Source: Octopus vulgaris (taxonomy: Eukaryota). From it: a stretch of DNA of 62,000 bases. How positions within the stretch are numbered: position 1 is the first letter of the stretch; each line of letters opens with the position of its first letter. Under the pieces are notes generated by a model. That model saw only the letters and a list, made by a program, of their open reading frames with translations, did not search any database and had not been told where the DNA came from. This document shows positions 4,506-56,177 of this stretch, piece after piece. The translations under genes and the position numbers were made by a program. Where the stretch lies: assembly GCA_951406725.2 (NCBI GenBank), contig OX597817.1, positions 87,874,001 to 87,936,000 on the forward strand, read 5' to 3'.

Positions 4506-4892
4506 TGGTCTTTATTGTATTGCTCCTAGAAGGACAAAAATCAAAGTTTACCTAGGTAAATGTGAACTCTGGATATAAAGAGATGTAGTTAAATAACACA
4601 GTTATTTTATTCACAATGCCACTGAATTTGTCAACCACTACACTTCCATAGACATAAATATTAAAAAAGATATTATTTGCTTGAAGGAAAATTCTTATGA
4701 AACACAACAATATATTCTTTTTAAATATCTCTAATTAGAGTTAAGAATGATAAATCCATTCTTCAAAAAAATGTTGAAAAAATCAAAAGTAACACTAGTA
4801 ATGCAATGTTTTCAATGATTCCAGCCACATAAAGAATTATATGCAAGGCTGAGACATAAGTGTATTTAAATTACTCTACACACTGCATGAAG

Positions 4893-5225
4893 GCACATCG
4901 CTCAGTGGTTAGAGCATTGGGCTTACAATAACAAGGTAGTGAGTTTGATTCCCGGACTGGGTTGTGTGTTGTGTTCTTGAGCAAGAGACTTTATTTCACA
5001 TTGCTCCAGTTCACTCAGCTGTAGAAATGAGTTGCGACATCACTGGTGCCAAGTTGTATCAGCCTTTGCCATCCCCTTGGATAACATCAGTGGCATAGAG
5101 AAGGAAAGCTGATATTCATGGGTGATTGCTAGTCTTCCATAAACATCTGGCTCAGACTTGAGCCTCAGAGGGGAACATTCTAGGTGCAATTCTATGTTCA
5201 TTCATGACCGAAGGGAATCTTTTAC
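4893..5225 (+). mobile_element. tRNA-derived SINE with V/CORE-like central domain (also ~34513-34800, ~59745-59975)
   Basis: A box gctcagtggttagagc, B box gagtttgattcccgg, then ttgtgttcttgagcaagagactttatttcacattgctccagttcactcagctgtagaaatgagt. Confidence 0.7.
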
Positions 5226-7355: not shown

Positions 7356-7449
7356 GTATATAGGGGAAGAATTCACAAAAAAAAAATACAAAGACAAGTG
7401 GTGTAGACAACAAACAGATGTATTAGTTTAATGCTCGGGAAGTGAGAAA

Positions 7450-7490
7450 GTCTTTAACATTTCGAGCCTATGCCCTTCCACAGAACGGAA
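7450..7490 (-). ncRNA. Degenerate minimal hammerhead-like motif in a PLE pseudo-LTR remnant
   Basis: Minus strand: CCGTT CTGTGGA A GGG catagg CTC GAA ATGT T AAAGAC; flank resembles the 3' end of the PLE at 20028-20161. Confidence 0.55.
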
Positions 7491-9194
7491 CACAGAAAGA
7501 AACAGGGAGGGCAAATAAAGAATGTATAGTGGTTAGCAATCTATCATACATACATATACACACATACATGTAAAGATATATACATTCATACACACACACA
7601 CAAACACATACACACACACGCACATATATATATATATATTGGTTATAAGAGGTAATGGTGTCATTGAGACCCAAAGGAATCTTACATATATACCAATCTG
7701 CCTAAAAAAATGGATCTACAACTTCAATATCCCTACATATCTTACATCTATTTTCTTTCCTCCACCTCACTCTCTATTTTGTATCCTATCTAAACTAACT
7801 ATTACTTAAGGGATATAATTAATAAATATCCTGGAAACAGCTGTAAGACCTTCTATCTATAAATGTTCTAATATCTACACAGCCTTGGTTTTTTTATCTC
7901 ATTATGCAAAAAATTCTTATATATATATATATATATTATATTTATATTCCTGCTAGAAATACAGTTATTTCTCACTCAATCATCTCCTGTATGTTTTACA
8001 TTTCCTCTTTAGCATTCATATTAAATAGATAACTCCACATTATCCAATAGACAATGACTGTCATTATATTTTGTAGCTTATTAAAAAGTGAAATACCTTT
8101 AGCACTCGTTGAGGTAATCATGACTTTCAACATAAATTCATAAATTCTTTAATTGTAACAATAATTAAATGGCTACTAATCAGGCAACCAGCAAGACAAA
8201 TGTCTAATATGAAAAGGAAATGTGTGTATCACTGTTTGATTAGCAGATGTATCAATATTGATTAAAATAGAAATAATATCATTTACTATAATTACAGTCT
8301 TGTAAGTGCATAATTGCATTGATTAATTACCACTCTCATTGCTTCATTGTTAGAAAAATAAGGAACCATGAAATTTTGCAGCTTCTCCAATCTTCAATTC
8401 CTGCTCTTCTTCTATAATTGTACTTTTGTAGAAAATATTTTACACAAACAATGCTTATGTACATGTATCTTTAGAATTTCATTAGCTGCTGTATTCTTTC
8501 AATCCTTATTTATTTTTTTGTTTTTAGGAAAACCTACCTAAGCAAACCAAAATAAATTACATTTTTTCATTCATTCTTTTCTCTAACAAAATTAACCATT
8601 GTGATATTTAATATCATTACAAAATCAGTTTTAAATTCTTTTTTTTTTTCTTTTCTTCTTTGTTGCTTATTCATTAAATTTTCAAAATAGTGTTTGTTGT
8701 CTTTCTCCCCTTCTGCATGATTTTCTGGTTGGTGTTTAGAAAGAAGAAACAAATGCATAATTTTCCACAAAAAGTTATCATTAAAAGAATTTCTGAATTC
8801 TGTCTATCGTTACCAAGGTTTTGTTATTTTCTTCATAAATTTCTTTATTTCTTATAGGAATTCTTTCATTTTCAAATTTGTTTCTTGAGAATTTTTTCCC
8901 CTTCTGTTTCTTATCTTAACTATTTACCTTTTCCTTTGAAAGAACTTGCAAACCATTTATTTTGCTATCATTTCGGTCTGTATTATATAATTTGAGTCAG
9001 TAATGATTCCTTACAAATGATAAATGGTTTAAGTAAATAAAAGGAACTGTATGCTTCTGTGAGGGTTTCAAGTTGGCTTTCAGTTACTTGAGCATTTCAA
9101 ATGATTTAATTGGTGGGAATGAAATAGATACTTTTAGAAAAGATATGCTATCTATGCATAAACACATATATGTGCATACACACATGCTCACACA

Positions 9195-9237
<43 letters not shown>

Positions 9238-9373
9238 TAGATAGATAGATATAATATACACACATACATATACACATATATAATTATATGTATGAGTGTT
9301 TCTTTTCACATACTGTACATATAAATGTATGCATATAAATGTATGCATGCATTTACTGCGTGTGTGTGTATAC

Positions 9374-9414
<41 letters not shown>

Positions 9415-9690
9415 TCTAAATATACATATTACATGTGTGTGTGTGTATATATATATATAATTATATGTATGAGTATTTCAGTTTTATATTTAAGAGATGA
9501 GGAATTATGTACATTATTTACGTTATTTACATTTGACAGATATTTGCGCTCATCTTGTTTGTTGTTAACACAACATTTTGGCTGATATACCCTCCAGCCT
9601 TCAACAGGCATCTTGGGCATGTGGTGTAGTGGTTAAGAGCGTGGGCTACTAACCCCAAGATTCCAAGTTTGATTCCAAGGAGTGACCTGA

Positions 9691-9749
<59 letters not shown>

Positions 9750-9895
9750 GAAATGACAGAAAAATTTAAGGTGGAGTACATTTTGGCTGATATACCCTCC
9801 AGCCTTCATCAGGCGTCTTGGGCATATGGTGTAGTGGTTAAGAGCGTGGGCTACTAATCCCAAGATTCCAAGTTTGATTCCAAGGAGTGACCTGA

Positions 9896-9933
<38 letters not shown>

Positions 9934-9936
<3 letters not shown>

Positions 9937-11205
9937 GAAATGACAGAAAAATTTAAGGTGGAGTACTTGCACTGACTGAGACTGATCCTTAAGTTGAAAT
10001 TAAATGGACGGAATAAGATCGAAGCTATCAACACCTAGATGGTTTCGCTCCTTAGATATGGAGCAGGGGTAATTGCATGGACAGTAGACTAACTAAACAG
10101 CATAGACAGAAAGACAAGAATGTTGCTAACTAGATATGGGTAACTCCACCCAAAAAGTGATACAGTCAGACTGTATGTACCAAGAAAAAGAGCGGGGAGT
10201 GGACTTATTGGATGCGAACACAGCATTAGAGCAGAAGAAAACAACATAGCATGGTATGTAAAAAATGCCACAGAACTGCTATTATTAGAAGTAAGAAGAT
10301 CAGGCTTGTGTAATGAAAGATTGCAAAGATAAAGCACTATATAAGAAATTGAAAACGAGTGAAACTGAAAATAGGTGGATAAAGAAAAGAATGCATGGTC
10401 AATTTCATAGGGATGTTGAAGATAAGACAAACAGAGAAAAAAGATGGCTGTGGATGACTAAGAGTGATTTAAAACCAGAAATGGAGGCTCTCATCTGTGC
10501 TGCCCAAGAGCAAGTACTAAGAACAAACTACATAAAATACGGAATAGACAACACAACAGTCAGTGATAAGTGCAGAATCTGTGGACAAAATGGTGAAACC
10601 ATATGGTATATTACCAGCCAATGTGCACCACTAGCCCAGAAGGAATATAAGAGATGCCACAACAATATAGCCAAGTTTGTCCATTAGACACTTTGCAACA
10701 AGTATGGACTTGACAGAGCAAAAATTTGGTATGACCACAAACCTGAAGGGATCGTCAAAAATAGAAATGCAAAGATCCAATGGGATTTTATGATTAAGTG
10801 CAACCATGAGATAGAGAATAGGAAGCCGGATATAGTCTTAATTGAGAAAGAAAACATCATAGATATAGCATGCCCAGCTGACAACAAGGTATGCGATAAG
10901 GAAGAAAGGAAATTTGATAGATATGTCAGATTAGCTTGGGAAGTTAAGCAGTTGTGGTCAATGAAAAAGGTAGCAGTAGTACCAATAATTTTCGGAGCCC
11001 TAGGAACAGTGAGCAAAAACCCTGAGAAGTACATGGAACAAATAGGGGCTGCAATGAGGGTGGAGCACTTGCAGAAAACAGCACTACTTGAAACTACTCG
11101 AATACTCCAGAAGGTGCTTGAAAAATAAGAGGTGTTACCTTAGTTCACTAGTACTGAACAGCTGACACTGTAGTACATCTCCAGCATTAGAAGCTGTGCA
11201 AAGTC

Positions 11206-11246
<41 letters not shown>
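9934..11246 (+). mobile_element. 5'-truncated R4/Dong-clade LINE (RT thumb, CCHC knuckle, RLE) inserted in (AAT)n
   Basis: LLRYGAGVIAW..LHPKSDTVRLYVPRK; MHGQFHR..DKCRICGQNGETIWYITSQC..YKRCHN; KPDIVLIEKENIIDIACPAD..VVPIIFGALG..LETTRILQKVLEK*; (AAT)n at both ends. Confidence 0.85.
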
Positions 11247-11248
<2 letters not shown>

Positions 11249-11295
11249 TTGAAAAATACCTTAGGAAATAGAACCCAGGTTTGAAATTTCCCCAA

Positions 11296-11338
11296 AACAT
11301 CTGATGATGGTTGGAGAGTATATCAGCCAAAACGTGTT
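11296..11338 (+). ncRNA. Hammerhead-like motif (G12A, stem I truncated)
   Basis: CTGATGA(11301-07) T GGTTG gagagtatat CAGCC AAA ACGT; sister copies on the - strand at ~9565-9612 and ~9780-9820. Confidence 0.55.
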
Positions 11339-11717
11339 AACAACAAACAAGATGACGACAAATATCCATCAAATGTAAATAATGTATGAGTATTTCTTCA
11401 CATATACTGTTCATATAAATGTATACATGCATTTAGTCTGTGTGTGTGTGTGTGTGTACACAAATATATATCTGTATATGTTTTGGCTCATTTGCTTATT
11501 TGAAATGTTGAGAAACTTGAAAATAATTTTTTTTTAAGTTGCTCTTCCAAAGAAAGCTATAAGTAATAAATTACATAATATTGAGTAAAAAAAACCCTTT
11601 GAATAAGATAAAATAGATATAATCACTTATACAAAATGAACAACATGTTTACTGTATGTCAGACAGTTATCGGGATTAGGAGTTTATCTGTAAAAGTGAG
11701 AGAGTGAATCTTTTTAA

Positions 11718-18430: not shown

Positions 18431-18750
18431 TTTGGTTTGGTTGGAACTTTTCAGCAGCCTCATGTCTGACCTGTAGCCCAATGCAGGTTATTTCATATAA
18501 ATTCCCAGTTGTCACCTATGCTACAGGTATTTTTTTCTCCTTTATCTTTTTTATTTGTCTCAATCATTTGACTACAGCTATGCTGGAGCACCACCTTGAA
18601 GGGTTTTAGTCAAACAAATTCACCCCAGGATGTATTTCTTAATCCTAGTACTTATTCTATTAGTATTTACAGGGACATAAACACACTAACACCAGTTGTC
18701 AAAGTAATGAGAGGACAAACACAGACAAGCACACAGATACATATATATAT

Positions 18751-20159
18751 ATTATCGGTGCCACCTCACTCTCCCGCGAACATCTAGATTCCTTCCTCTC
18801 TTTCGTCCAATCTTTCCATCCAGCCCTCCACTTCACTTCCACTATCTCCAACACCTCTGTCTCCTTCCTCGACATTTCGGTTAGCATTCTTCACTCCACT
18901 CTTACCACCTCCATTCACTACAAACACACAGACTCACACTCATACCTCAACTTCTCTTCCTCCCACCCAGAACACACCAAGCTTTCCATCCCCTATTCCC
19001 AATTCCTCCGTCTACGTAGGCTCTGTAGTGACGACCATGACTTTGAGACTCAGTCTCAACGTATGGCTCACCACTTCACCCTACGTGGATACCCCCTCAC
19101 CACTATCCACACCGCCCTTGCCAGAGCACGGTCCGTGGACCGTGTATCTGCTCTCTCTCCCCGAACCCGCCCTGTAGTCTCCCGCCTCCCTTTTCCCCTC
19201 ACTTACCACCCCACGACCCTACGTCTCCAACGCACCATTCTTCGAGCTTTCCGTCATCTCCAGTCCGACCCGTCCACTTCACACCTCTTCCCTAACCGAC
19301 CCCTCCCCTCTTTCAAACGAGCCCACAACCTTCGAGACCTTTTGGTCCATAGCTCCTTCCCTGACCCTACCTCCCAACCCGGCTCGTTCCCCTGCTCCCG
19401 CCCACGTTGCCGCACTTGCCCTTACCTCTCCAACACCACCCGCCTCACTAGCACCCACCATCGACCCTATCCCATCATCCACTCCTTCACCTGCACCTCC
19501 AGCAATATTATCTATTGCATCTCTTGCTCTCTCTGCAATTCCTTGTACATCGGACAAACGGGACGCCGCTTGGCTGACCGGTTCGCGGAACACCTTCGTG
19601 ACATCCACCTTGCGAACGACACACCGGTCTCACGCCATTTCCGCTCCACCGGTCACTCCTTGCAACACCTATCTGTGTTCGGTTTGTCCTTACACAGAGG
19701 CCATCCGGATTCCCGTTTGCGCCGTGAACAGGAATTAATCTTCTCTCTTCGCTCTTATACGCCATTTGGTCTCAACTCTCCCCCCTCCTCATCTAACCCC
19801 CTCTCCCCCTCCTCACCTATCCTTTCTCCCCCGACCCCTACTTCTTCAGTCCTTCATCCTTTCACCCCCTACTCCCCTTCCCTTCTTCCCTCTTTCTCCC
19901 TCCCTCTTCCCCTTCCCTCTGCTCCCTCACTCCCTCTCTCCCCTTCTCTCTCCCCCTCTCCCTCTTTCCTCCTTCATCCCCCTCATCCCCTTCCTTCTCC
20001 CTCTGTGTATCTTTCTCTCTCTGTGTATCTTTCTGTTGAAGAGCGTAGGCTCGAAACGTTAAAGACTTGTTTTATTTATATTTCCTGAGCGCCATACTAA
20101 TACAATTGTTCGTTTGTTTTCCACCTGCCTTCGTCTTTTGTTTATTTTCATAAAGCTTC

Positions 20160-20161
<2 letters not shown>
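18751..20161 (+). mobile_element. Young 5'-truncated Penelope-like element (Neptune-type): RT thumb, Cys linker, GIY-YIG, pseudo-LTR
   Basis: Uninterrupted frame 18751-20088: IIGATSLSREHLDSFL..FLDISV..HYKHTDSHSYLNFSSSHP..IPYSQFLRLRRLCS; CSRPRCRTC; IIYCISCSLCNSLYIGQTGRRLADRFAEH; RLRREQELIFSLRSYTPFGLN. CpGs retained; (TA)n on both sides. Confidence 0.92.
20028..20065 (+). ncRNA. Minimal type-I hammerhead-like motif with A6U and an extra A before stem II
   Basis: TCTTT | CTGTTGA | A | GAG cgtagg CTC | GAA | ACGT | T | AAAGA. Confidence 0.65.
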
Positions 20162-20200
<39 letters not shown>

Positions 20201-20202
<2 letters not shown>

Positions 20203-20600
20203 CCAGTGGTGCCTCGACTGGCTTCCATAAAATGCACCATCCGAATTGTGGCCGATGCCAGCGCCGCCTCGACTGGCTTCCATGTCGGTGACACGTAAAA
20301 AGCACCATCCGAATCGTAGCCAAAGCCAGTGCCGCCTTGACTGGCTTCCATAAAATGCACCAATCCGACCGTGGCCGATGCCAGCCTCGCCTGGCACCAG
20401 TGCAGGTGGCACGTAAAAAGCACCCACTACACTCACGGAGTGGTTGGCATTAGGAAGGGCATCCAGCTGTAGAAACTTTGCCAGATAAGACCGGAGCCTG
20501 GTGCAGCCTTCTGGCTTCCCAGATCCCCGGTCGAACCGTCCAACCCATGCTAGCATGGAGAACGGATGTTAAACGATGATGATGATGATGATGATGATGA
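20201..20600 (+). mobile_element. Young S2 SINE with internal tandem subrepeats and (GAT)n tail
   Basis: Repeated ..cgactggcttcc..aaatgcaccatccga..gtggccgatgccag.. units; CpG-rich. Confidence 0.8.
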
Positions 20601-21965
20601 TATATATATACACACACACACACACACAACAGGCTTCCAGTTTCTATCTACCAAATCCTCTCACAAGGCTTTGGTTGGCCTAAGGCTATAAGTAGAATAT
20701 ACTTGCCCAAGATGCCACACAATGGGACTGAGCCCAGAAACATGTGGTTAAGAATCATGCTTCTTACTACACAACCACACCAGCGCCTATGTTCTAAATC
20801 ATTCTTTCTACGGTCATGTGTCAATTAGAATTTCTCTGCACCAATTTTCAATTGTGAAATCTTTTAGTTTCCATATCTTCATTCTCAATCTCATCTTTCA
20901 TTTTGGTGCCTAACTTTGATTTTGAAGTTACACACCACCGATTAATGTTGTGTAGTACATCCTTCATCACATATTTTAAAAGATTATATGTGGAAAAATG
21001 TTTCTAAAATATAATAACAATTGCTGGCAAAGATCATTTGGAAGGTGGAGGGGGTCAGTTGCTTCATAGTTGGAAGAAGAAAACAAAATCCTAGTAGTAA
21101 TTGATAGAAACAATCAAACAAAAGGGGAAATAATTTTAAAACCTTAAGAATTTTACAGATAATTGAAATTTCATGCTTAGCAAAAAATTCTGATCTTTGT
21201 TAAGGGGGACAACTCTGAACATATTTCATTATTTGATACTTGTCAGCATCTATGATGCAAACATCAGCAACAAATATTAGTTATAATTAGCAGTACCTAT
21301 GGAAGTTCCACAATTATTTTGAAAATTGTATTATGAAATTGTATATTTTTTCTGAAACATTTGATTCTTGAGATATAAAAATTCACATTGGCTGCATTGA
21401 AGAGGCAATCAATCAATCAAACTGGCTAGCTACCTACCTATCAACCTCTACCTACCTACCTATCAACCTCTACCTACCTATCAACCTCTACGTACCTGTC
21501 TACTGTCCTATCTATCTACCTTCATACCTACCTATCCATCTATCTATCTATCTATCATTTTCTACTTACATTTGATGTATATATCTACTCTAACAATACA
21601 GACAAACATTTAAACCAAATAACTCAAAATTATAAGAAAACTAAATAATTGTGATGACCTTGCATGGCATCAACTGCTACACATAAACAGGTAAAAGTTA
21701 GATCCACAGCTATTTGCTAAGGTTATTTCACTTTGATTTAACTATGTATCAGTATATCTAGCTATCTGTCTTTCTATCTTCTATCTCTCAATGAATCTAT
21801 CTAGCCACATAGATACATCAGTGAATTGATGATATACAAATGGTTATACATTAAAACCTGTAACAACAACTAAACTTTTATTGTCTGTCACAATATTTTG
21901 TTATACTAGGTTTAAAATTATGTAACTGCTTTCCACTCCTGCATTCCTTTCAAGCAACACTCACT

Positions 21966-33538: not shown

Positions 33539-34834
33539 ACCCTAATACTTCTAACTACAAATAAGTGCCATTGTGCAAATAAATGCCATTAGTGCTACTG
33601 CACGCTGCTGTGTATAGTAGAGAACTGTGAATTTGATAGCTGTTTGGTTAGCTGAATTACTGAGTTCAAATCTTTCGACAAGTACTGACTTGGTTTTAGC
33701 TACCCCATCTGAAAAGTCTTTAAGTATTATTTCTCCTGCAACCCAGCTTAACAAATTGTACATCAATCAATCACCAACAGTATTGAGAGAGAGAGAGAGA
33801 GAGAGAGGACAATGATATTGTCAGTTTCAGCCATTTAATCTGGATAGTCAAAGCACAATGAATATAAGTTGCATTAGCTACAACAATCAGTATCATATTA
33901 ATTATTCTATATCCAGAGGATAAATATTAATCTAATCTCAAATTTCTGTATCTCATTATATAATTAATGATTGTCGTCAACATGAAATTGCATAGTGTAA
34001 TTGAAGATACTAGCCAGGGCTGAGTAAATGCAGTTTCAATGCCAACTTATCAATATGGTTACTTAATAATATATAGTAAATTTTAACTACGTAATCACTT
34101 GTTTCATCTCTTTCACAATAAACCACATGATTTATGTATATGATTATTTCTTTAGAACAAGTATTTGGTTCGATGAAGCCTTACAGAAATTAGATGACCA
34201 TATAATGTGATTATTTGATACTAGTCTATAGTACTTCCAACTGCTTTATGTTGGTGTATGAGTGAGAAGAAGGTGGAGGTTGTGTTACACTAAATATTTA
34301 TGAGCACTAAATAAATCTTTTCCTCATTATTCCAAAATCATTAGTAATAATCAGGCATAACTGTGTGATTAGAAGTTTGCATCCCAGCCACATGGGCCTG
34401 GGTTCAGACCCACTACATGGCACCATCATCAAAATGTCTTCTGTTATAACCCTGGACCAACTAAGGCCTTGTGAGTGGACTTGGAAGACAGAAAACGAAA
34501 GAAGCCTGTCATATGGTTCAGTGGTTAGAATGTCGAGCTCACCATCATGAGGCAGTGAGTTTGATTCCCAGACCAGGCTGTGTGTTGTGTTCTTGAGCAA
34601 GACACTTTATTTCATGTTGCTTGAGTCCACTCAGCTGTAGAAATGAGTTGCAGCATCACTGGTGTCAAGCTGTATTGGCCTTTGCCTTTCCCTTAGATAA
34701 CATTAGTGGTGTGGAGAGGGGAAGCTGGTATGCATGGGTGACCGCTGGTCTGCCATAAACAACTTTCTAGGTGCAATCCCATGGTCATTTATGATCAAAG
34801 GGAGTCAGGGAATCTTTACCCAAATATATGTATA

Positions 34835-36989: not shown

Positions 36990-38885
36990 CTTTTATTTGT
37001 TTCAGTTGTTAGACTGCAGACATGGTGGGGCACTGCCTTGAAGACATTTTGATCAAATGAATCAACCCCAGTCCTTTTTTTTTCTCTTCTTTTTCATCCT
37101 AGTACTTATTCCACCAGATTCTTTTGCCAAGCTGCTAAGTTACGGGAATTTAAACACACCAACATCAGTTAAGTGGTGGGGTGGAGGGGACAAACACACA
37201 CATACACATACACACACACATACACACACATGCATATATTAAAGGCTTCTTTTAGTTTCCTTCTACCAAATCCACTCACAAGGCTTTGGTCGGCCTGAGG
37301 CTATAGTAGAAGACACTTGCACAAGGTGCAATGCAGTAGGGCTGAACCCAGAACCATGTGATTTGGGAAGCAAATGTCTTACTACTAAATAAATAATTCC
37401 ATGTATGTCCCAGTTAAATGTTGCTTCTCTTTTTCATCTTGTGATGTTTATATATTTTGCTAGGATTTATCAAGAATCTCTTAGAAGACACTTGGACAAC
37501 ATTGGAGTGTGGCACATCTGATATACCACCCACAACCCCTAAACAGTGGAGCACTGATGTCATTGACAGAACTAGTCACAAGGTAATGATACTTAATTCT
37601 TTCTATTACTTGCTTCTGTTATTTGATTGTGGCCATGCTGGAGCACCACCTTAAAGAGTTTTATTTAGTTGAAGAAATTGACCCCTGGACTTATTCTTTG
37701 TAAGCCTAGTACTTAATCTATCAGTTATGGGACATAAATACACCATCATCAGTTGTCAAGTGATGATGGTGGGGACAAACACAAACACAAAGACACACAC
37801 ATACATACATATATATATATGACTGGCTGTGTGGTAAGTAGCTTGCTTACCAACCACATGGTTCTGGGTTCAGTCCCACTGCATGGCATCTTGAGCAAGT
37901 GTCTTCTGTTATAGCCTCGGGCCGACCAAAGCCTTGTGAGTGGATTTGATAGACGGAAACTGAAAGAAGCCTATTGTATATATGTGTATATATATATATA
38001 TATGTATGTGTGTGTATATGTTTGTGTATCTGTGTTTGTCGCCCCAGCATCGCTTGACAACCGATGCTGGTGTGTTTATGTCCCCGTAACTTAGCAGTTT
38101 GGCAAAAGAGACTAAGTCCTGGGGTTGATTTGCTTGACTAAAGGTGGTGCTCCAGCAGGGTTGCAGACAAATGACTGAAACAAGTAAAAGAGTAAGAGTA
38201 ATATATATATATATATATATATGATGGGCTTCTTTCAGTTTCTGTCTACCAAATCCACTCACCAGGCTTAGATCAGCCTGAGGCTATAGTAGAAGACACT
38301 TGCCCAAGGTGTCACACAGTGGGACTGAACCCAGAACTATGTGGTTGAGATGCAAGCTTCTTATCATACCACCACGCCTGCACCTAAATGTCAATAATAA
38401 ACTTGACTCAAGGTGGCAAGCTGGCAGAATTGTTAGCTTGCCAGGCAAAATGCTTCACAATATTTTGCTTATCTTTACGTTCTGAGTTCAAATTCCACTG
38501 AGATTGACTTTGCCTTTCATACTTTGGGGTCGATAAAGTTGAGGATTTGGGTTGACTTACTCACTCCCCCAAACTTGCTGGCTTTGTGCCAAAATTGGAA
38601 ATCAATAATATACTTCACAACATTGTCTTCTACTTCAGACAAGAAAATATTGGATGATAATCACACAAAATATTCATCTGCTACTAACATCACTGGTAAG
38701 CAAGGCACAGGTGTAGCTGTGTGGTTAAGAAGTTTGCTTCCCAACCACATGGTTTCTGGTTCAGTCCCACACCATGGCAAATTGGGCAAGTGTCTTCTAC
38801 TCTAGCCCCCCCCCCCCCAACTCCCAGGTCAACCCAAAGCCTTGCACGTCGATTTGGTAGACAGAAACTGAAAACAGCCTAACAC
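36990..38885. mobile_element. Dense S1 SINE cluster around exon E (36990-37385 -, 37590-37800 -, 37820-38205 +, 38220-38385 -, 38705-38885 +)
   Basis: S1 head and tail motifs in both orientations. Confidence 0.75.
37464..37582 (+). CDS. TBC1D32: TBC1D32 internal exon E (119 nt, phase 1 to 0)
   Basis: attttgctag|GA TTT..AAG|gtaatg; FIKNLLEDTWTTLECGTSDIPPTTPKQWSTDVIDRTSHK vs human [39 protein letters not shown]. Confidence 0.92.
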
Positions 38886-39489
38886 ATACACACACACACA
38901 CACATGCATGCACGCACACACCCTATCTGTCTCTCTTTATCTGTCTGTCCGTTTATCCATCTATTTATCTATCTATCAGTCGGTCAACTGTCTGTCTGTC
39001 TGTCTCTCTCTCTCCCACACACATTATTATTATTATTGTTTACTATTACCCATGTCTTATTTCTCACTCCATAAGTTCACACACACACTCTATCTACCAG
39101 TCAGTTTGTTGGCCTCTCTCTCTCTCTCTCTATCATATTATTATTATTGCAGCTATTATCCATGTCTTATTTCTCACTCCATAATTTCATGCGCGCATGC
39201 ATACACATACACATGTGTGTGCATGTTTGCATGTGTGTGTGTGTGTGTGTGTGTTTGCGCACGTGTGTGTGTTTGTATCTCCTTATCTTGATGTAGCATG
39301 ATAGTTGTAAATGAATGTCACTGTTACACAAGCAGTGTCATTTCACCTCCAATATTCTGCAAGAACATATTTGGGCATGGGGTAAATAGTACTTTGCTTA
39401 GAAACAGGTAAAGGTTGGCAACAGGAAGAGCATCCAGCCATAGAAAATCTGCCTCAATAAACTCATTCTGAGCATGAAAAGTTGACACG

Positions 39490-39587: not shown

Positions 39588-40610
39588 AATGAATACCTAA
39601 TACTGTCAGTGCTACCATCATTTTCATAATAATCACCTCCACATCAACCACCAACACTATCACCATCACTACCACCATCATCATCAATGCTATACTAAGT
39701 TAACTGAGCCAAAGTTCTTTTATTCTTTCATTCTTTTATTTGTTTCAGTCATTTGACTGTGGCCATCCTGGAGCACTACCTTTAGTCAAGCAAATCGACG
39801 CTAGGACTTATTCTTTGTAAGCCTAGTACTTATTCTATTGGTCTCTCTTACCGAACTGCTAACTGACGGGGATGTAAACACACCAGCATCGGTTGTCAAG
39901 CGATGTTGGGGGGACAAACACAGACACACAAACACACATACACATATATATATATACGACGGGCTTCTTTCAGTTTCCATCTACCAAATTCACTCACAAG
40001 GCTTTGATCGGCCCGAGGCAATAATAGAAGACACTTGCCCATGGTGCCACACAGTGGGATTGAACCCGGAACCATGTGGTTGGTTCTTATTCTTCTCACT
40101 GCATTGTTTCACTTGCAAAGACACTTAGCTTCCAATGGTAATATCTACATCTGTTTTTGTTGTTGTTGTCATCACCGGTATGGTAGTGGTGGTGGTGATA
40201 GTCATCATCATCATTGTTGTGGTGATGGTGGTCTTCTTCATTGTTGTAGTAGTGGTGGTAACCATCGTCATTATTGTTGTAGTAGTGGTAGTGGCCATCG
40301 TGCTCAATGTCATCATCATTATTATCATCATTGTCTTTGTTGTTGCTTAGCCCGTTTAACCTTGGTCAGATACATCCGTGATCAAAAACACTCATACCAC
40401 AGGTACTCTATCTTTTTAAGGCAGTCTAGGACTACCATATCCTCATGTGTCCTTTCCTTATTTAAGATAGTTGGATGTTGTTCACAAGCTTGATTGTTAT
40501 TTCTTCTTCTTCTTCTTCTTCTTCTTCTTCTTCTTCTTCTTCTTCTTCTTCTTCTTCTCCACCTCCTCCTCCTCCTCATCCTCATCCTCCTCCTCCTCTG
40601 CCAAGAATTC
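39490..40610. repeat. Low-complexity trinucleotide fields ((CAT)n, (GTT/GTG)n, (CTT)n); similar (CAC/ACC) field at 43560-43920
   Basis: Direct inspection; source of the spurious poly-M/V/R/S/T ORFs. Confidence 0.9.
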
Positions 40611-55921: not shown

Positions 55922-55991
55922 TACTATATCAGATATGTATTTTTCTCTTCATACACTCTTTTCTTTCCATCTGTTTTCTTTCTTCATCTAT

Positions 55992-56028
55992 TCTTTCTGT
56001 AGAGGAGCATAGGCTCAAAATGTTAAAT
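55992..56028 (+). ncRNA. Degenerate copy of the A6U hammerhead-like motif
   Basis: TCTTT CTGTAGA G GAG catagg CTC AAA ATGT T AAATA. Confidence 0.45.
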
Positions 56029-56177
56029 ACATCTCATTTAAATACATCTTCATTTAACATCCATTGTCCATAGTGGCATGAGTTGGATGGTTTTTAACCA
56101 GGGCTGGCAAGCTGGAAGGCTGTACAAGACTCTAGTCTAATTTGGTATAATCAGATTTGAAAGTAATTAGTATTGTA

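What the first reader, a model, noticed from the sequence alone, without database searches (positions are those of the whole stretch)
9465..11396. Candidate tRNA-headed, hammerhead-tailed retroposon (PLE-mobilised SINE) captured between a perfect 15-bp TSD
Seen: atgtatgagtatttc flanks the block exactly (9465-79, 11382-96). Removing the nested R4/Dong LINE and the tandem duplicate leaves a ~270-nt unit: tRNA-like head (A box 9622-32, B box 9667-76), (AAT)n, then a ~140-nt tail with a hammerhead-like core (CTGATGA-T-GGTTG..CAGCC-AAAACGT). An inverted ~100-nt copy of the tail (9511-9617) precedes the unit, joined through GGG microhomology. Established: inverted 5' copies of the pseudo-LTR and minimal hammerheads are PLE hallmarks; schistosome Sm-alpha combines a tRNA-type Pol III promoter with a hammerhead. 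Inference: a Pol III non-autonomous element that uses a PLE tail and machinery rather than a LINE partner. Caveat: all three copies here carry G12A, so this insertion is probably catalytically dead.
Basis: partly seen in the sequence, partly recalled or inferred. Interest (0 to 1): 0.85.

Follow-up and report, generated by a model that had tools for sequence, protein, structure and literature searches.

The report
Penelope-style insertion with tRNA-like head
An old, decayed retroelement nest in what is probably an octopus genome: its ends carry the signature of Penelope-like-element integration and a dead hammerhead-like motif, and its 5' end is a tRNA-derived promoter module, but one copy cannot show that this is a propagating tRNA-headed, hammerhead-tailed SINE.

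Summary
An exact 15-bp duplication (9465-79 / 11382-96) brackets a 1.9-kb block, and a neighbouring paralogous unit shows the uninterrupted site.

Inside the block, in order:
- a 30-39-nt one-sided extension;
- an inverted, 5'-truncated copy of the tail (83.5% identical);
- a 76-nt tRNA-derived module with A and B boxes at tRNA spacing;
- (AAT)n;
- a 5'-truncated LINE with a restriction-like endonuclease, flanked by (AAT)n on both sides;
- a later 205-bp tandem duplication;
- a 135-nt tail with a minimal-hammerhead-like motif.

The inverted copy, the one-sided extension and the long duplication match the published anatomy of Penelope-like element (PLE) insertions. A relaxed hammerhead descriptor finds 6 sites in the window against about 0.05 or fewer in shuffles. 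Three are here and three lie in an authentic GIY-YIG PLE family in the same window.

The motif is broken: AAAA replaces GAAA in all copies, the direct copy differs by a 3-nt indel at the cleavage triplet, and Rfam finds neither a hammerhead nor a tRNA.

No second copy of head or tail exists in the window, and no genome of this species could be reached. Whether head and tail form one recurrent element is therefore untested. The closest precedent is schistosome Sm-alpha.

The parts
9283..9334 (.). Paralogous copy of the target (unit R1 of a local ~177-bp repeat); acts as an empty-site proxy with a single copy of the duplicated 15-mer
   Evidence: family D4, 87%; joined flanks align collinearly
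9465..9479 (.). Left target-site duplication, atgtatgagtatttc
9480..9518 (.). One-sided extension of 30-39 nt between the duplication and the inverted copy. It ends at 9509 or 9518 depending on how a 9-nt duplication is aligned. No match elsewhere in the window.
   Evidence: compare the '30- to 40-bp extension (tail)' of PLE insertions in PMC8557442
9510..9617 (-). Inverted, 5'-truncated copy of the tail, with the hammerhead-like motif on the minus strand starting at 9607 (CTGTTGA-A-GGCTGG..TCAGCC-AAAA-TGTT-GTGTT). Contains a 9-nt tandem duplication (9522-9530).
   Evidence: (I3/I4)
9615..9690 (+). tRNA-derived head. The A box (9622-32) and B-box-like element (9666-76) fall at tRNA positions 8-18 and 52-62 if position 1 is 9615, which is the junction with the inverted copy (3-nt GGG overlap). 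It is not a foldable tRNA.
   Evidence: negative results
9693..9746 (+). (AAT)18 following the head
9778..9966 (+). Second unit of a 205-bp tandem duplication of 9573-9777: part of the inverted tail, the head, (AAT)12 and the first 33 nt of the LINE. It therefore post-dates the LINE insertion.
   Evidence: (D3, 97%)
9934..11204 (+). 5'-truncated, decayed non-LTR retrotransposon with a restriction-like endonuclease C-terminus (CxxC..(H>Y)..C, RHN-like, RKPDIV..IDIA). Dong/R4-like by its (AAT)n flanks. Carries frameshifts and stop codons.
   Evidence: (zf-RVT, weak)
11206..11244 (+). (AAT)13 after the LINE 3' end
11247..11381 (+). Direct tail. The minimal-hammerhead-like motif lies at 11301-11336 (CTGATGA-T-GGTTGG-agagtata-TCAGCC-AAAA-CGT). 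The 3' end ...gtaaata abuts the duplication, and a 5-nt overlap with it (atgta) is possible.
11382..11396 (.). Right target-site duplication

Best explanation
This is one old retrotransposition event made by Penelope-like-element (PLE) machinery, later modified twice.

Proposed sequence of events:
1. A PLE reverse transcriptase/GIY-YIG endonuclease nicked an AT-rich low-complexity site.
2. It copied an RNA whose last ~135 nt is a PLE-type 3' tail carrying a degenerate minimal hammerhead.
3. As is typical for PLEs, it also laid down a second, inverted, 5'-truncated copy of that tail at the other end, plus a 30-39-nt extension. The result is a 15-bp target duplication.
4. The long (direct) cDNA ran to a 5' end that coincides with position +1 of a 76-nt tRNA-derived Pol III module, and was joined to the inverted copy through GGG.
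5. The template was either a composite head-(AAT)n-tail RNA or two RNAs joined by template switching within AAU repeats. This single locus cannot tell which.
6. A Dong/R4-like LINE that uses (AAT)n then inserted, 5'-truncated, into the internal (AAT)n.
7. A 205-bp tandem duplication followed.

Shown here: the anatomy, the duplication, the box spacing, the enrichment of the motif, and the order LINE then duplication.

Inferred: PLE machinery as the agent, the head being part of the same cDNA, and Pol III transcription. The hammerhead-like motif is very probably inactive in these copies.
For: - Exact 15-bp duplication, and an empty site collinear with a paralogue.
- An inverted copy of the 3'-terminal ~100 nt abutting the 5' end of the unit, plus a 30-39-nt extension at one end only. 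This is the arrangement described for PLE insertions (PMC8557442).
- The tail has no other copy in the window. Two independent insertions that both end at the edges of one duplication-bounded block are unlikely.
- A relaxed minimal-hammerhead descriptor gives 6 hits against 0.01-0.05 in shuffles. Three are in this locus and three are in a PLE family with a GIY-YIG ORF at 19063-20088.
- A PLE relative in another genome has a canonical CUGACGA..GAAAC-GUC motif about 120 nt after its ORF.
- All 26 cells of helices I and II pair in the three copies, against 14-59% in slid registers.
- The A and B boxes have exact tRNA spacing, and position 1 falls at the junction.
- There is no run of four or more T in head, (AAT)n or tail.
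Against: - There is only one locus. No second copy of head or tail exists in 62 kb, and none could be fetched from elsewhere.
- The arms are 16.5% diverged while the 15-bp duplication is perfect (chance about 0.07 if both date from one event).
- AAAA replaces GAAA in both independent copies. The direct copy differs by a 3-nt indel at the cleavage triplet; read as it stands, it has G at position 17 and no helix I.
- The minimum-free-energy folds do not show helix II, and Rfam gives no hammerhead or tRNA hit even in 111-154-nt searches.
- The head is followed by the same (AAT)n that ends the adjacent LINE, and (AAT)n is otherwise nearly absent from the window. This fits an ordinary LINE-partnered SINE that arrived separately.
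- The PLE family in the window shares no sequence with the tail.
Confidence: 0.5

Rival explanations
1. One reading: head-(AAT)n-tail (~270 nt) is an established, multi-copy, Pol III-transcribed SINE family that borrows a PLE tail and PLE machinery. This locus is one full-length copy of it.
For: Same anatomy as the best explanation. The direct copy starts at tRNA position +1, and the unit has no Pol III terminator. The abundant SINE of this genome also carries internal microsatellites. Sm-alpha shows that a tRNA-derived head plus a hammerhead can propagate (PMC2770079).
Against: There is no second copy in 62 kb, although two other tRNA-SINE families and the main SINE recur there. No partner PLE was found. 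The core carries AAAA in both independent copies. Searches with translated frames found nothing, which is weak evidence because this genome is not in those libraries.
Confidence: 0.25
2. Secondary adjacency. A PLE-type insertion first placed the inverted and direct tails with an (AAT)-rich 5' edge. A Dong/R4-type event then inserted an ordinary (AAT)n-tailed tRNA-SINE into that tract. It may have arrived together with the 5'-truncated LINE through template switching. Head and tail would be unrelated elements.
For: The head is followed immediately by (AAT)n, the same tail type as the LINE next to it. The LINE is flanked by (AAT)n on both sides, and its relatives end in ..acaacaat(aat). Dong-R4 LINEs are abundant and active in Octopus (PMC13282606).
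Against: No (AAT)n remains to the left of the head. This model requires the SINE's 5' junction to coincide with the inverted/direct junction, and it requires an (AAT)n tract to have existed there beforehand in a window where such tracts are otherwise nearly absent.
Confidence: 0.3
3. A non-autonomous DNA transposon (a miniature inverted-repeat element, MITE, or a foldback element) with ~100-bp terminal inverted repeats, later invaded by a SINE and a LINE.
For: Inverted repeats of ~100 nt lie near both ends.
Against: The inverted repeat does not reach the left end, because 30-39 unrelated nt intervene. A 15-bp duplication is longer than I recall for the known cut-and-paste superfamilies (from memory, not checked here). 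The arms carry a PLE-type motif.
Confidence: 0.04
4. Not a single insertion: a chance 15-mer repeat in low-complexity DNA around an unrelated pile-up of repeats or a local rearrangement.
For: The flanks are low-complexity and locally duplicated. The window has 26 other exact direct-repeat runs of 15 nt or more at 0.5-4 kb spacing.
Against: The 15-mer abuts the end of the tail on the right, the joined flanks are collinear with the paralogous unit, and both arms of a sequence that is otherwise single-locus in the window lie at the ends of the block.
Confidence: 0.03

Closest known systems
Sm-alpha / Sj-alpha SINE-like elements of schistosomes
   Same: A tRNA-derived 5' part with Pol III boxes, combined with a hammerhead motif in a short non-coding retroposon (PMC2770079).
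   Different: Sm-alpha has tens of thousands of copies and an active canonical type I hammerhead that Rfam-type searches recognise. Here there is one decayed locus, a minimal-type motif with AAAA for GAAA, an internal (AAT)n, and a PLE-style inverted copy and extension.
Non-autonomous derivatives of Penelope-like elements and metazoan non-LTR retrozymes
   Same: Short non-coding elements that share PLE 3' or pseudo-LTR sequence with a hammerhead motif, and long duplications when any are present (PMC7229834, PMC8557442, bioRxiv 10.64898/2026.07.22.740005).
   Different: Retrozymes are tandem arrays of 170-400-nt units, each with an active type I hammerhead, and they give circular RNAs. Here there is no tandem array of hammerhead units, and a tRNA-like head is present.
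Canonical EN+ PLE insertions (Neptune/Penelope/Poseidon/Hydra, Naiad)
   Same: An inverted 5'-truncated copy next to the 5' end, a 30-40-bp extension at one end, and a minimal hammerhead about 80-130 nt from the 3' end. The PLE family in this window and locus L004 show the same placement.
   Different: No RT/GIY-YIG ORF and no pseudo-LTR tandem. The insertion is not in a (TA)n tract, unlike the three PLE copies in the window.
Dong/R4-clade site-specific LINEs (for the nested element only)
   Same: Restriction-like endonuclease C-terminus (CCHC then PD..D) and insertion within (TAA)n/(AAT)n. That Dong itself targets (TAA)n is recalled from memory, not checked here.
   Different: Clade membership was not tested by phylogeny. 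The closest retrievable relatives (67-75% amino-acid identity, about 70-75% nucleotide identity) come from a jellyfish metagenome and unidentified marine assemblies.

Membership tests
tRNA-derived SINE | Internal Pol III A and B boxes at tRNA-like spacing | tested here: met
   TRGYNNARNGG-N(25-45)-RGTTYRANNCC gives 3 hits (two are this head) against 0.017 in shuffles. The boxes fall at tRNA positions 8-18 and 52-62.
tRNA-derived SINE | Recognisable similarity to a tRNA (covariance model or cloverleaf) | tested here: not met
   No RF00005 hit at E<=10 in 3-kb and 111-nt searches. Aragorn finds none. By inspection, the acceptor and T stems do not pair.
tRNA-derived SINE | Dispersed multi-copy family, each copy with its own target-site duplication | not testable with these tools
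   Only this locus exists in 62 kb. No same-species sequence was reachable.
tRNA-derived SINE | 3' end shared with an autonomous partner | tested here: inconclusive
   The tail is not shared with the only PLE family in the window. The head's (AAT)n matches the tail type of the nested LINE.
Hammerhead ribozyme (type I / PLE minimal hammerhead) | CUGANGA box | tested here: met
   CTGATGA in the direct copy and in inverted copy 2; CTGTTGA in inverted copy 1.
Hammerhead ribozyme (type I / PLE minimal hammerhead) | GAAA box (G12 A13 A14 A15.1) | tested here: not met
   AAAA in all three copies. From general hammerhead biochemistry, not tested here, G12 is required for catalysis.
Hammerhead ribozyme (type I / PLE minimal hammerhead) | Helix II closed by G10.1-C11.1, with the extra nucleotide after A9 typical of PLE minimal hammerheads | tested here: met
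   6-bp helix GGYUGG/UCAGCC, paired in all copies with one C-to-U change that keeps pairing. Feature list from PMC4209133.
Hammerhead ribozyme (type I / PLE minimal hammerhead) | U16.1-H17 cleavage triplet followed by helix I | tested here: inconclusive
   The inverted copy has AAAAU-GUU followed by GUGUU, which pairs with GAUGC (5 bp, 3 of them wobble). The direct copy is 3 nt shorter here and, read as it stands, has G at position 17.
Hammerhead ribozyme (type I / PLE minimal hammerhead) | Match to the curated covariance models | tested here: not met
   No Hammerhead family at E<=10. The authentic PLE motifs in the window were not separately scanned with Rfam.
Hammerhead ribozyme (type I / PLE minimal hammerhead) | Self-cleavage | not testable with these tools
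   Needs in vitro transcription of monomer and dimer constructs.
PLE-type integration product | Inverted 5'-truncated copy adjacent to the 5' end of the unit | tested here: met
   9510-9617 against 11291-11386, 83.5% identity. Criterion from PMC8557442.
PLE-type integration product | 30-40-bp extension at one end only | tested here: met
   30-39 nt at 9480-9509/9518, and none at the right end.
PLE-type integration product | Sequence shared with an autonomous RT + GIY-YIG element | not testable with these tools
   No such element was found in the window. The genome was not available.
Metazoan non-LTR retrozyme | Head-to-tail tandem repeats, each unit carrying a hammerhead | tested here: not met
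   The only tandem duplication (205 bp) includes LINE sequence and a reverse-strand motif, and it post-dates the LINE.
Dong/R4-type LINE (nested element) | C-terminal restriction-like endonuclease and (TAA)n target | tested here: met
   CxxC..C and RKPDIV..IDIA motifs found by inspection. (AAT)n lies on both sides. Pfam gives only a weak zf-RVT hit.
Dong/R4-type LINE (nested element) | Phylogenetic placement of the RT in the R4 clade | not tested
   The RT domain is missing from this 5'-truncated copy.
MITE / TIR DNA transposon | Inverted repeats at the very termini and a short fixed duplication | tested here: not met
   The left arm starts 30-39 nt inside the block, and the duplication is 15 bp.

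The most novel reading that the evidence does not exclude
Head-(AAT)n-tail is a genuine propagating family in a cephalopod: a Pol III-driven, tRNA-derived SINE that is integrated by Penelope-like-element machinery through a pseudo-LTR-type tail with a hammerhead-derived motif. Its internal (AAT)n doubles as a landing pad for Dong/R4 LINEs. That would be a second, independent Sm-alpha-like lineage, and direct evidence that PLEs can drive SINEs.
Probability: 0.22. Interest if true: 0.55.

Novelty: new member of a known kind. Interest (0 to 1): 0.35.

Why it matters
SINEs are normally paired with LINE partners. The only well-known tRNA-headed, hammerhead-bearing retroposons are the schistosome Sm-alpha/Sj-alpha elements, which are now linked to Penelope-like elements through the retrozyme work. 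A second lineage in molluscs would show that PLE reverse transcriptases can be hijacked by Pol III transcripts, and it would give a tractable case for the poorly understood PLE integration mechanism (inverted copies, one-sided extension). As it stands, the locus is a clean textbook-style example of a PLE-type insertion scar around a short non-coding unit. It is one decayed copy with an inactive motif, so its value is as a lead for a genome-wide search rather than as a finding.

Tried and rejected
1. Rfam covariance models at E<=10 on 3 kb, on the head alone and on the tail alone gave no tRNA and no hammerhead. Only microsatellite-driven miRNA hits and noise appeared. Aragorn found no tRNA in the window.
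2. Other copies in the window were sought with blastn (word size 7) and nhmmer --max using head and tail profiles. None was found beyond this locus. Weak head hits are other tRNA-SINEs.
3. Exact 22-27-mers of tail and head gave 0 hits in metagenome contigs, genome contigs and viral contigs.
4. Translated-frame searches gave nothing. The ORF spanning the reverse-complement head and the tail found nothing in the 5.8-billion library, and only spurious TPR/repeat proteins in the 1.84-billion representative library.
5. Attempts to reach same-species DNA failed. The window's PLE ORF and the one Octopus bimaculoides hit (P0102) are not on record. LINE and PLE homologues come from other organisms: a jellyfish metagenome, unidentified ENA assemblies and a coral.
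6. The idea that the 5' part of the tail is a second, diverged copy of the head's B-box region was rejected. The local alignment score is not above shuffles (p = 0.23).
7. The idea that the 33 nt after (AAT)n are a separate element or the LINE's own 5' terminus was rejected. They align in register with the internal coding region of LINE relatives, so they are simply the start of the 5'-truncated LINE.
8. L1-style twin priming was rejected. The inverted segment duplicates the very 3' end instead of coming from upstream RNA sequence.
9. The MITE/TIR model was rejected (see the rival explanations).
10. Minimum-free-energy folding of the motif regions recovers the hammerhead-like shape for the authentic PLE copy at 20033, but not for the tail copies.
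11. Literature string searches for the head and for the main SINE found no paper.
Full report
**Setting.** The window is eukaryotic, AT-rich and full of (TA)n/(CA)n tracts and SINEs. From memory, the abundant SINE with an internal microsatellite looks like the common octopus SINE. The only named hit in any search was an Octopus bimaculoides protein carrying a PLE-like stretch. I treat 'an octopod' as an inference, not a result. None of the accessible collections held DNA of this species. Everything about copy number outside the 62 kb is therefore untested.

**Observation.** The 15-mer atgtatgagtatttc is exact at 9465-79 and 11382-96. The flanks belong to a local ~177-bp repeat. When the two flanks are joined with one copy of the 15-mer, they align collinearly across the junction with the neighbouring unit at 9263-9370. 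So this is a real target-site duplication (TSD) and not merely one of the 26 exact direct-repeat runs of 15 nt or more that the window contains at this spacing.

Between the duplications lie, in order:
- 30-39 nt with no match anywhere else (9480-9509/9518);
- an inverted copy of the last ~100 nt of the block (9510/9519-9617 against 11291-11386: 81/97 identical, a 3-nt indel, and a 9-nt tandem duplication in the inverted copy);
- a 76-nt tRNA-like head (9615-9690);
- (AAT)18;
- a second unit of a 205-bp tandem duplication (9573-9777 repeated as 9778-9966, 97%);
- a decayed LINE;
- (AAT)13;
- a 135-nt tail (11247-11381).

They align in register with LINE relatives. The LINE therefore runs from about 9934 to 11204, is flanked by (AAT)n on both sides, and was already in place when the 205-bp duplication happened.

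**The head.** TGGTGTAGTGG and AGTTTGATTCC match relaxed A-box and B-box consensus sequences. With position 1 at 9615 they fall at tRNA positions 8-18 and 52-62. This box pair at this spacing occurs three times in the window, twice here and once in an unrelated tRNA-SINE at 34514, against 0.017 in dinucleotide shuffles. It is a promoter-type relic and not a tRNA. The acceptor and T stems do not pair, Aragorn finds nothing, and the Rfam tRNA model finds nothing at E<=10 even in a 111-nt search. Position 1 coincides with the junction to the inverted copy, where GGG is shared.

**The tail and the hammerhead question.** The direct copy reads CUGAUGA-U-GGUUGG-(8)-UCAGCC-AAAA-CGU... The inverted copy, read on its own strand, reads CUGUUGA-A-GGCUGG-(8)-UCAGCC-AAAA-UGUU-GUGUU.

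I wrote a relaxed descriptor following the published features of PLE minimal hammerheads (PMC4209133): CUGNNGA, 0-1 extra nucleotide, helix II of at least 4 bp closed by G10.1-C11.1, RAAA, then YGU. It gives 6 hits in the window against 0.01-0.05 in shuffles. Three are the copies in this locus.

The other three (20033+, 7483-, 55997+) are 3' ends of one PLE family. All three are inserted in (TA)n. One carries a 341-aa ORF with a CX4CX2C linker and a GIY-YIG domain. Its homologues have RVT_1, PF26215 and GIY-YIG domains. A PLE relative from another genome (L004) has a canonical CUGACGA-A-GGGC-UAGC-GCUC-GAAAC-GUC about 120 nt after its ORF. So the descriptor finds real PLE hammerheads, and the tail's motif has the same architecture and the same position, about 80 nt from the 3' end compared with about 125 nt in the window's PLE.

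All 26 testable cells of helices I and II pair in the three copies, against 14-59% in slid registers. There is no double-sided compensation, and only two of the three copies are independent.

Against activity:
- Position 12 is A in every copy.
- The direct copy differs by a 3-nt indel at the cleavage triplet.
- One inverted copy has U at position 6.
- Minimum-free-energy folds do not show helix II.
- No Rfam hammerhead model matches.

Membership in the ribozyme family fails on the GAAA box.

**What made the insertion.** Craig et al. [quoted passage not shown] This locus has both, plus a long duplication and a PLE-type motif in the repeated arms.

The inverted arm also matches the first five bases of the duplicated sequence (gtaaataATGTA). 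That suggests 5 nt of microhomology between the RNA 3' end and the target.

The alternatives fit worse:
- Inverted repeats of a DNA transposon should reach the termini, and 15 bp is longer than I recall for cut-and-paste duplications (from memory).
- L1-type twin priming inverts upstream sequence and does not duplicate the 3' end.
- Two independent insertions of a repeat that is otherwise absent from 62 kb would not both sit at the ends of one duplication-bounded block.

I put about 0.75 on PLE machinery having made the outer shell.

One tension remains. The arms differ by 16.5% while the duplication is perfect (probability about 0.07 if both date from one event). Either this is chance, or the two arms were copied from different RNAs.

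**Is the head part of the same element?** This is the crux, and it cannot be settled here.

For a single cDNA (composite RNA, or template switch within AAU repeats):
- The direct copy begins at the tRNA-like +1 and is joined to the inverted arm by microhomology.
- No (AAT)n lies to the left of the head.
- The unit has no run of four or more T.
- No pre-existing (AAT)n tract needs to be assumed, in a window where 3 of the 4 (AAT/ATT)n arrays of at least 5 units are in this locus.

For secondary adjacency:
- 'Head + (AAT)n' looks like a complete simple SINE with the same tail type as the LINE beside it.
- Relatives of that LINE end in ..acaacaat(aat).
- Dong-R4 LINEs are abundant and active in Octopus (PMC13282606).
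- A single Dong-type event with a LINE-to-SINE template switch could deliver both into an (AAT)-rich edge of the tail.

My estimates are about 0.5 for the head being in the PLE-made cDNA, about 0.3 for secondary adjacency, and about 0.25 that a propagating family exists (a subset of the first).

**History inferred.** The order of events is:
1. a PLE-type insertion;
2. a 5'-truncated LINE insertion into (AAT)n;
3. a 205-bp tandem duplication (97% identical, and it includes LINE sequence).

If the arms were identical at birth, their Jukes-Cantor distance of about 0.19 gives roughly 0.09 per lineage. On the Octopus vulgaris scale quoted in PMC13282606 that is of the order of 25 million years. This is only indicative.

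**Comparison and novelty.** Sm-alpha/Sj-alpha already combine a tRNA-derived head with a hammerhead (PMC2770079). Metazoan retrozymes are regarded as non-autonomous PLE derivatives (PMC7229834; bioRxiv 10.64898/2026.07.22.740005). Non-autonomous PLEs that share 3' ends with autonomous ones are described (PMC8557442). If real, this would be a new member of a known kind in a new phylum, with a minimal-type motif and an internal microsatellite as variations. With one decayed copy, a dead core and no partner, I score interest at 0.35. The genome-wide search listed under next steps would decide it quickly.

Noticed in passing
window 18757-20162 (+), 7379-7500 (-), about 55960-56060 (+): A Penelope-like element family: one 5'-truncated copy with a GIY-YIG ORF (19063-20088, CX4CX2C linker) and two short 3' fragments, all inserted in (TA)n tracts. 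All three carry a minimal-hammerhead-like motif with U at core position 6 (CUGUNGA, with N7 varying U/G/A), GAGC/GCUC helix II and RAAAYGUU. The 20033 copy has a clean 5-bp helix I. A canonical relative (L004 4761) has A at position 6. A fixed U6 is unexpected for an active hammerhead.
   Followed up: partly
window 4885-5225 (+) and 34505-34820 (+): Two copies of a different tRNA-derived SINE family (head TGGTTAGAGC..GAGTTTGATTCC, then a conserved body ..ttcttgagcaag..). One is inserted inside a copy of the abundant SINE.
   Followed up: partly
window, many sites, e.g. 18540-18756, 20600-20700, 37909-38262, 39838-40128: Many copies of an abundant SINE with an internal (TA)n/(CA)n microsatellite. 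It generates the 'YIYIYI' and 'KALVGPRL' pseudo-ORFs. From memory it looks like the common octopus SINE, and its microsatellite serves as a landing site for the PLE.
   Followed up: no
L002 (jellyfish metagenome contig), L001 and L003 (ENA ERZ25066843/47): Relatives of the nested LINE at about 70-75% nucleotide identity occur in a jellyfish metagenome assembly and in unidentified large contigs. That is unusually close for such distant hosts, so it may reflect horizontal spread or strong conservation. In L001 two copies lie head-to-head, each followed by the same downstream sequence, which suggests tandem arrangement.
   Followed up: partly
window 9693-9746, 9898-9933, 11206-11244 against 39023-39037: Three of the four (AAT/ATT)n arrays of at least 5 units in the 62 kb belong to this one locus, in a window dominated by (TA)n and (CA)n. 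The trinucleotide tracts therefore seem to be brought by the retroelements rather than to pre-exist.
   Followed up: partly
window 9263-9479 and 11397-11470: The insertion site lies in the second unit of a local ~177-bp tandem repeat (aattatatgtatgagt.tttctt..cacata..catataaatgtat.cat..gcattta..(tg)n(ta)n). This is what provides the empty-site proxy.
   Followed up: partly
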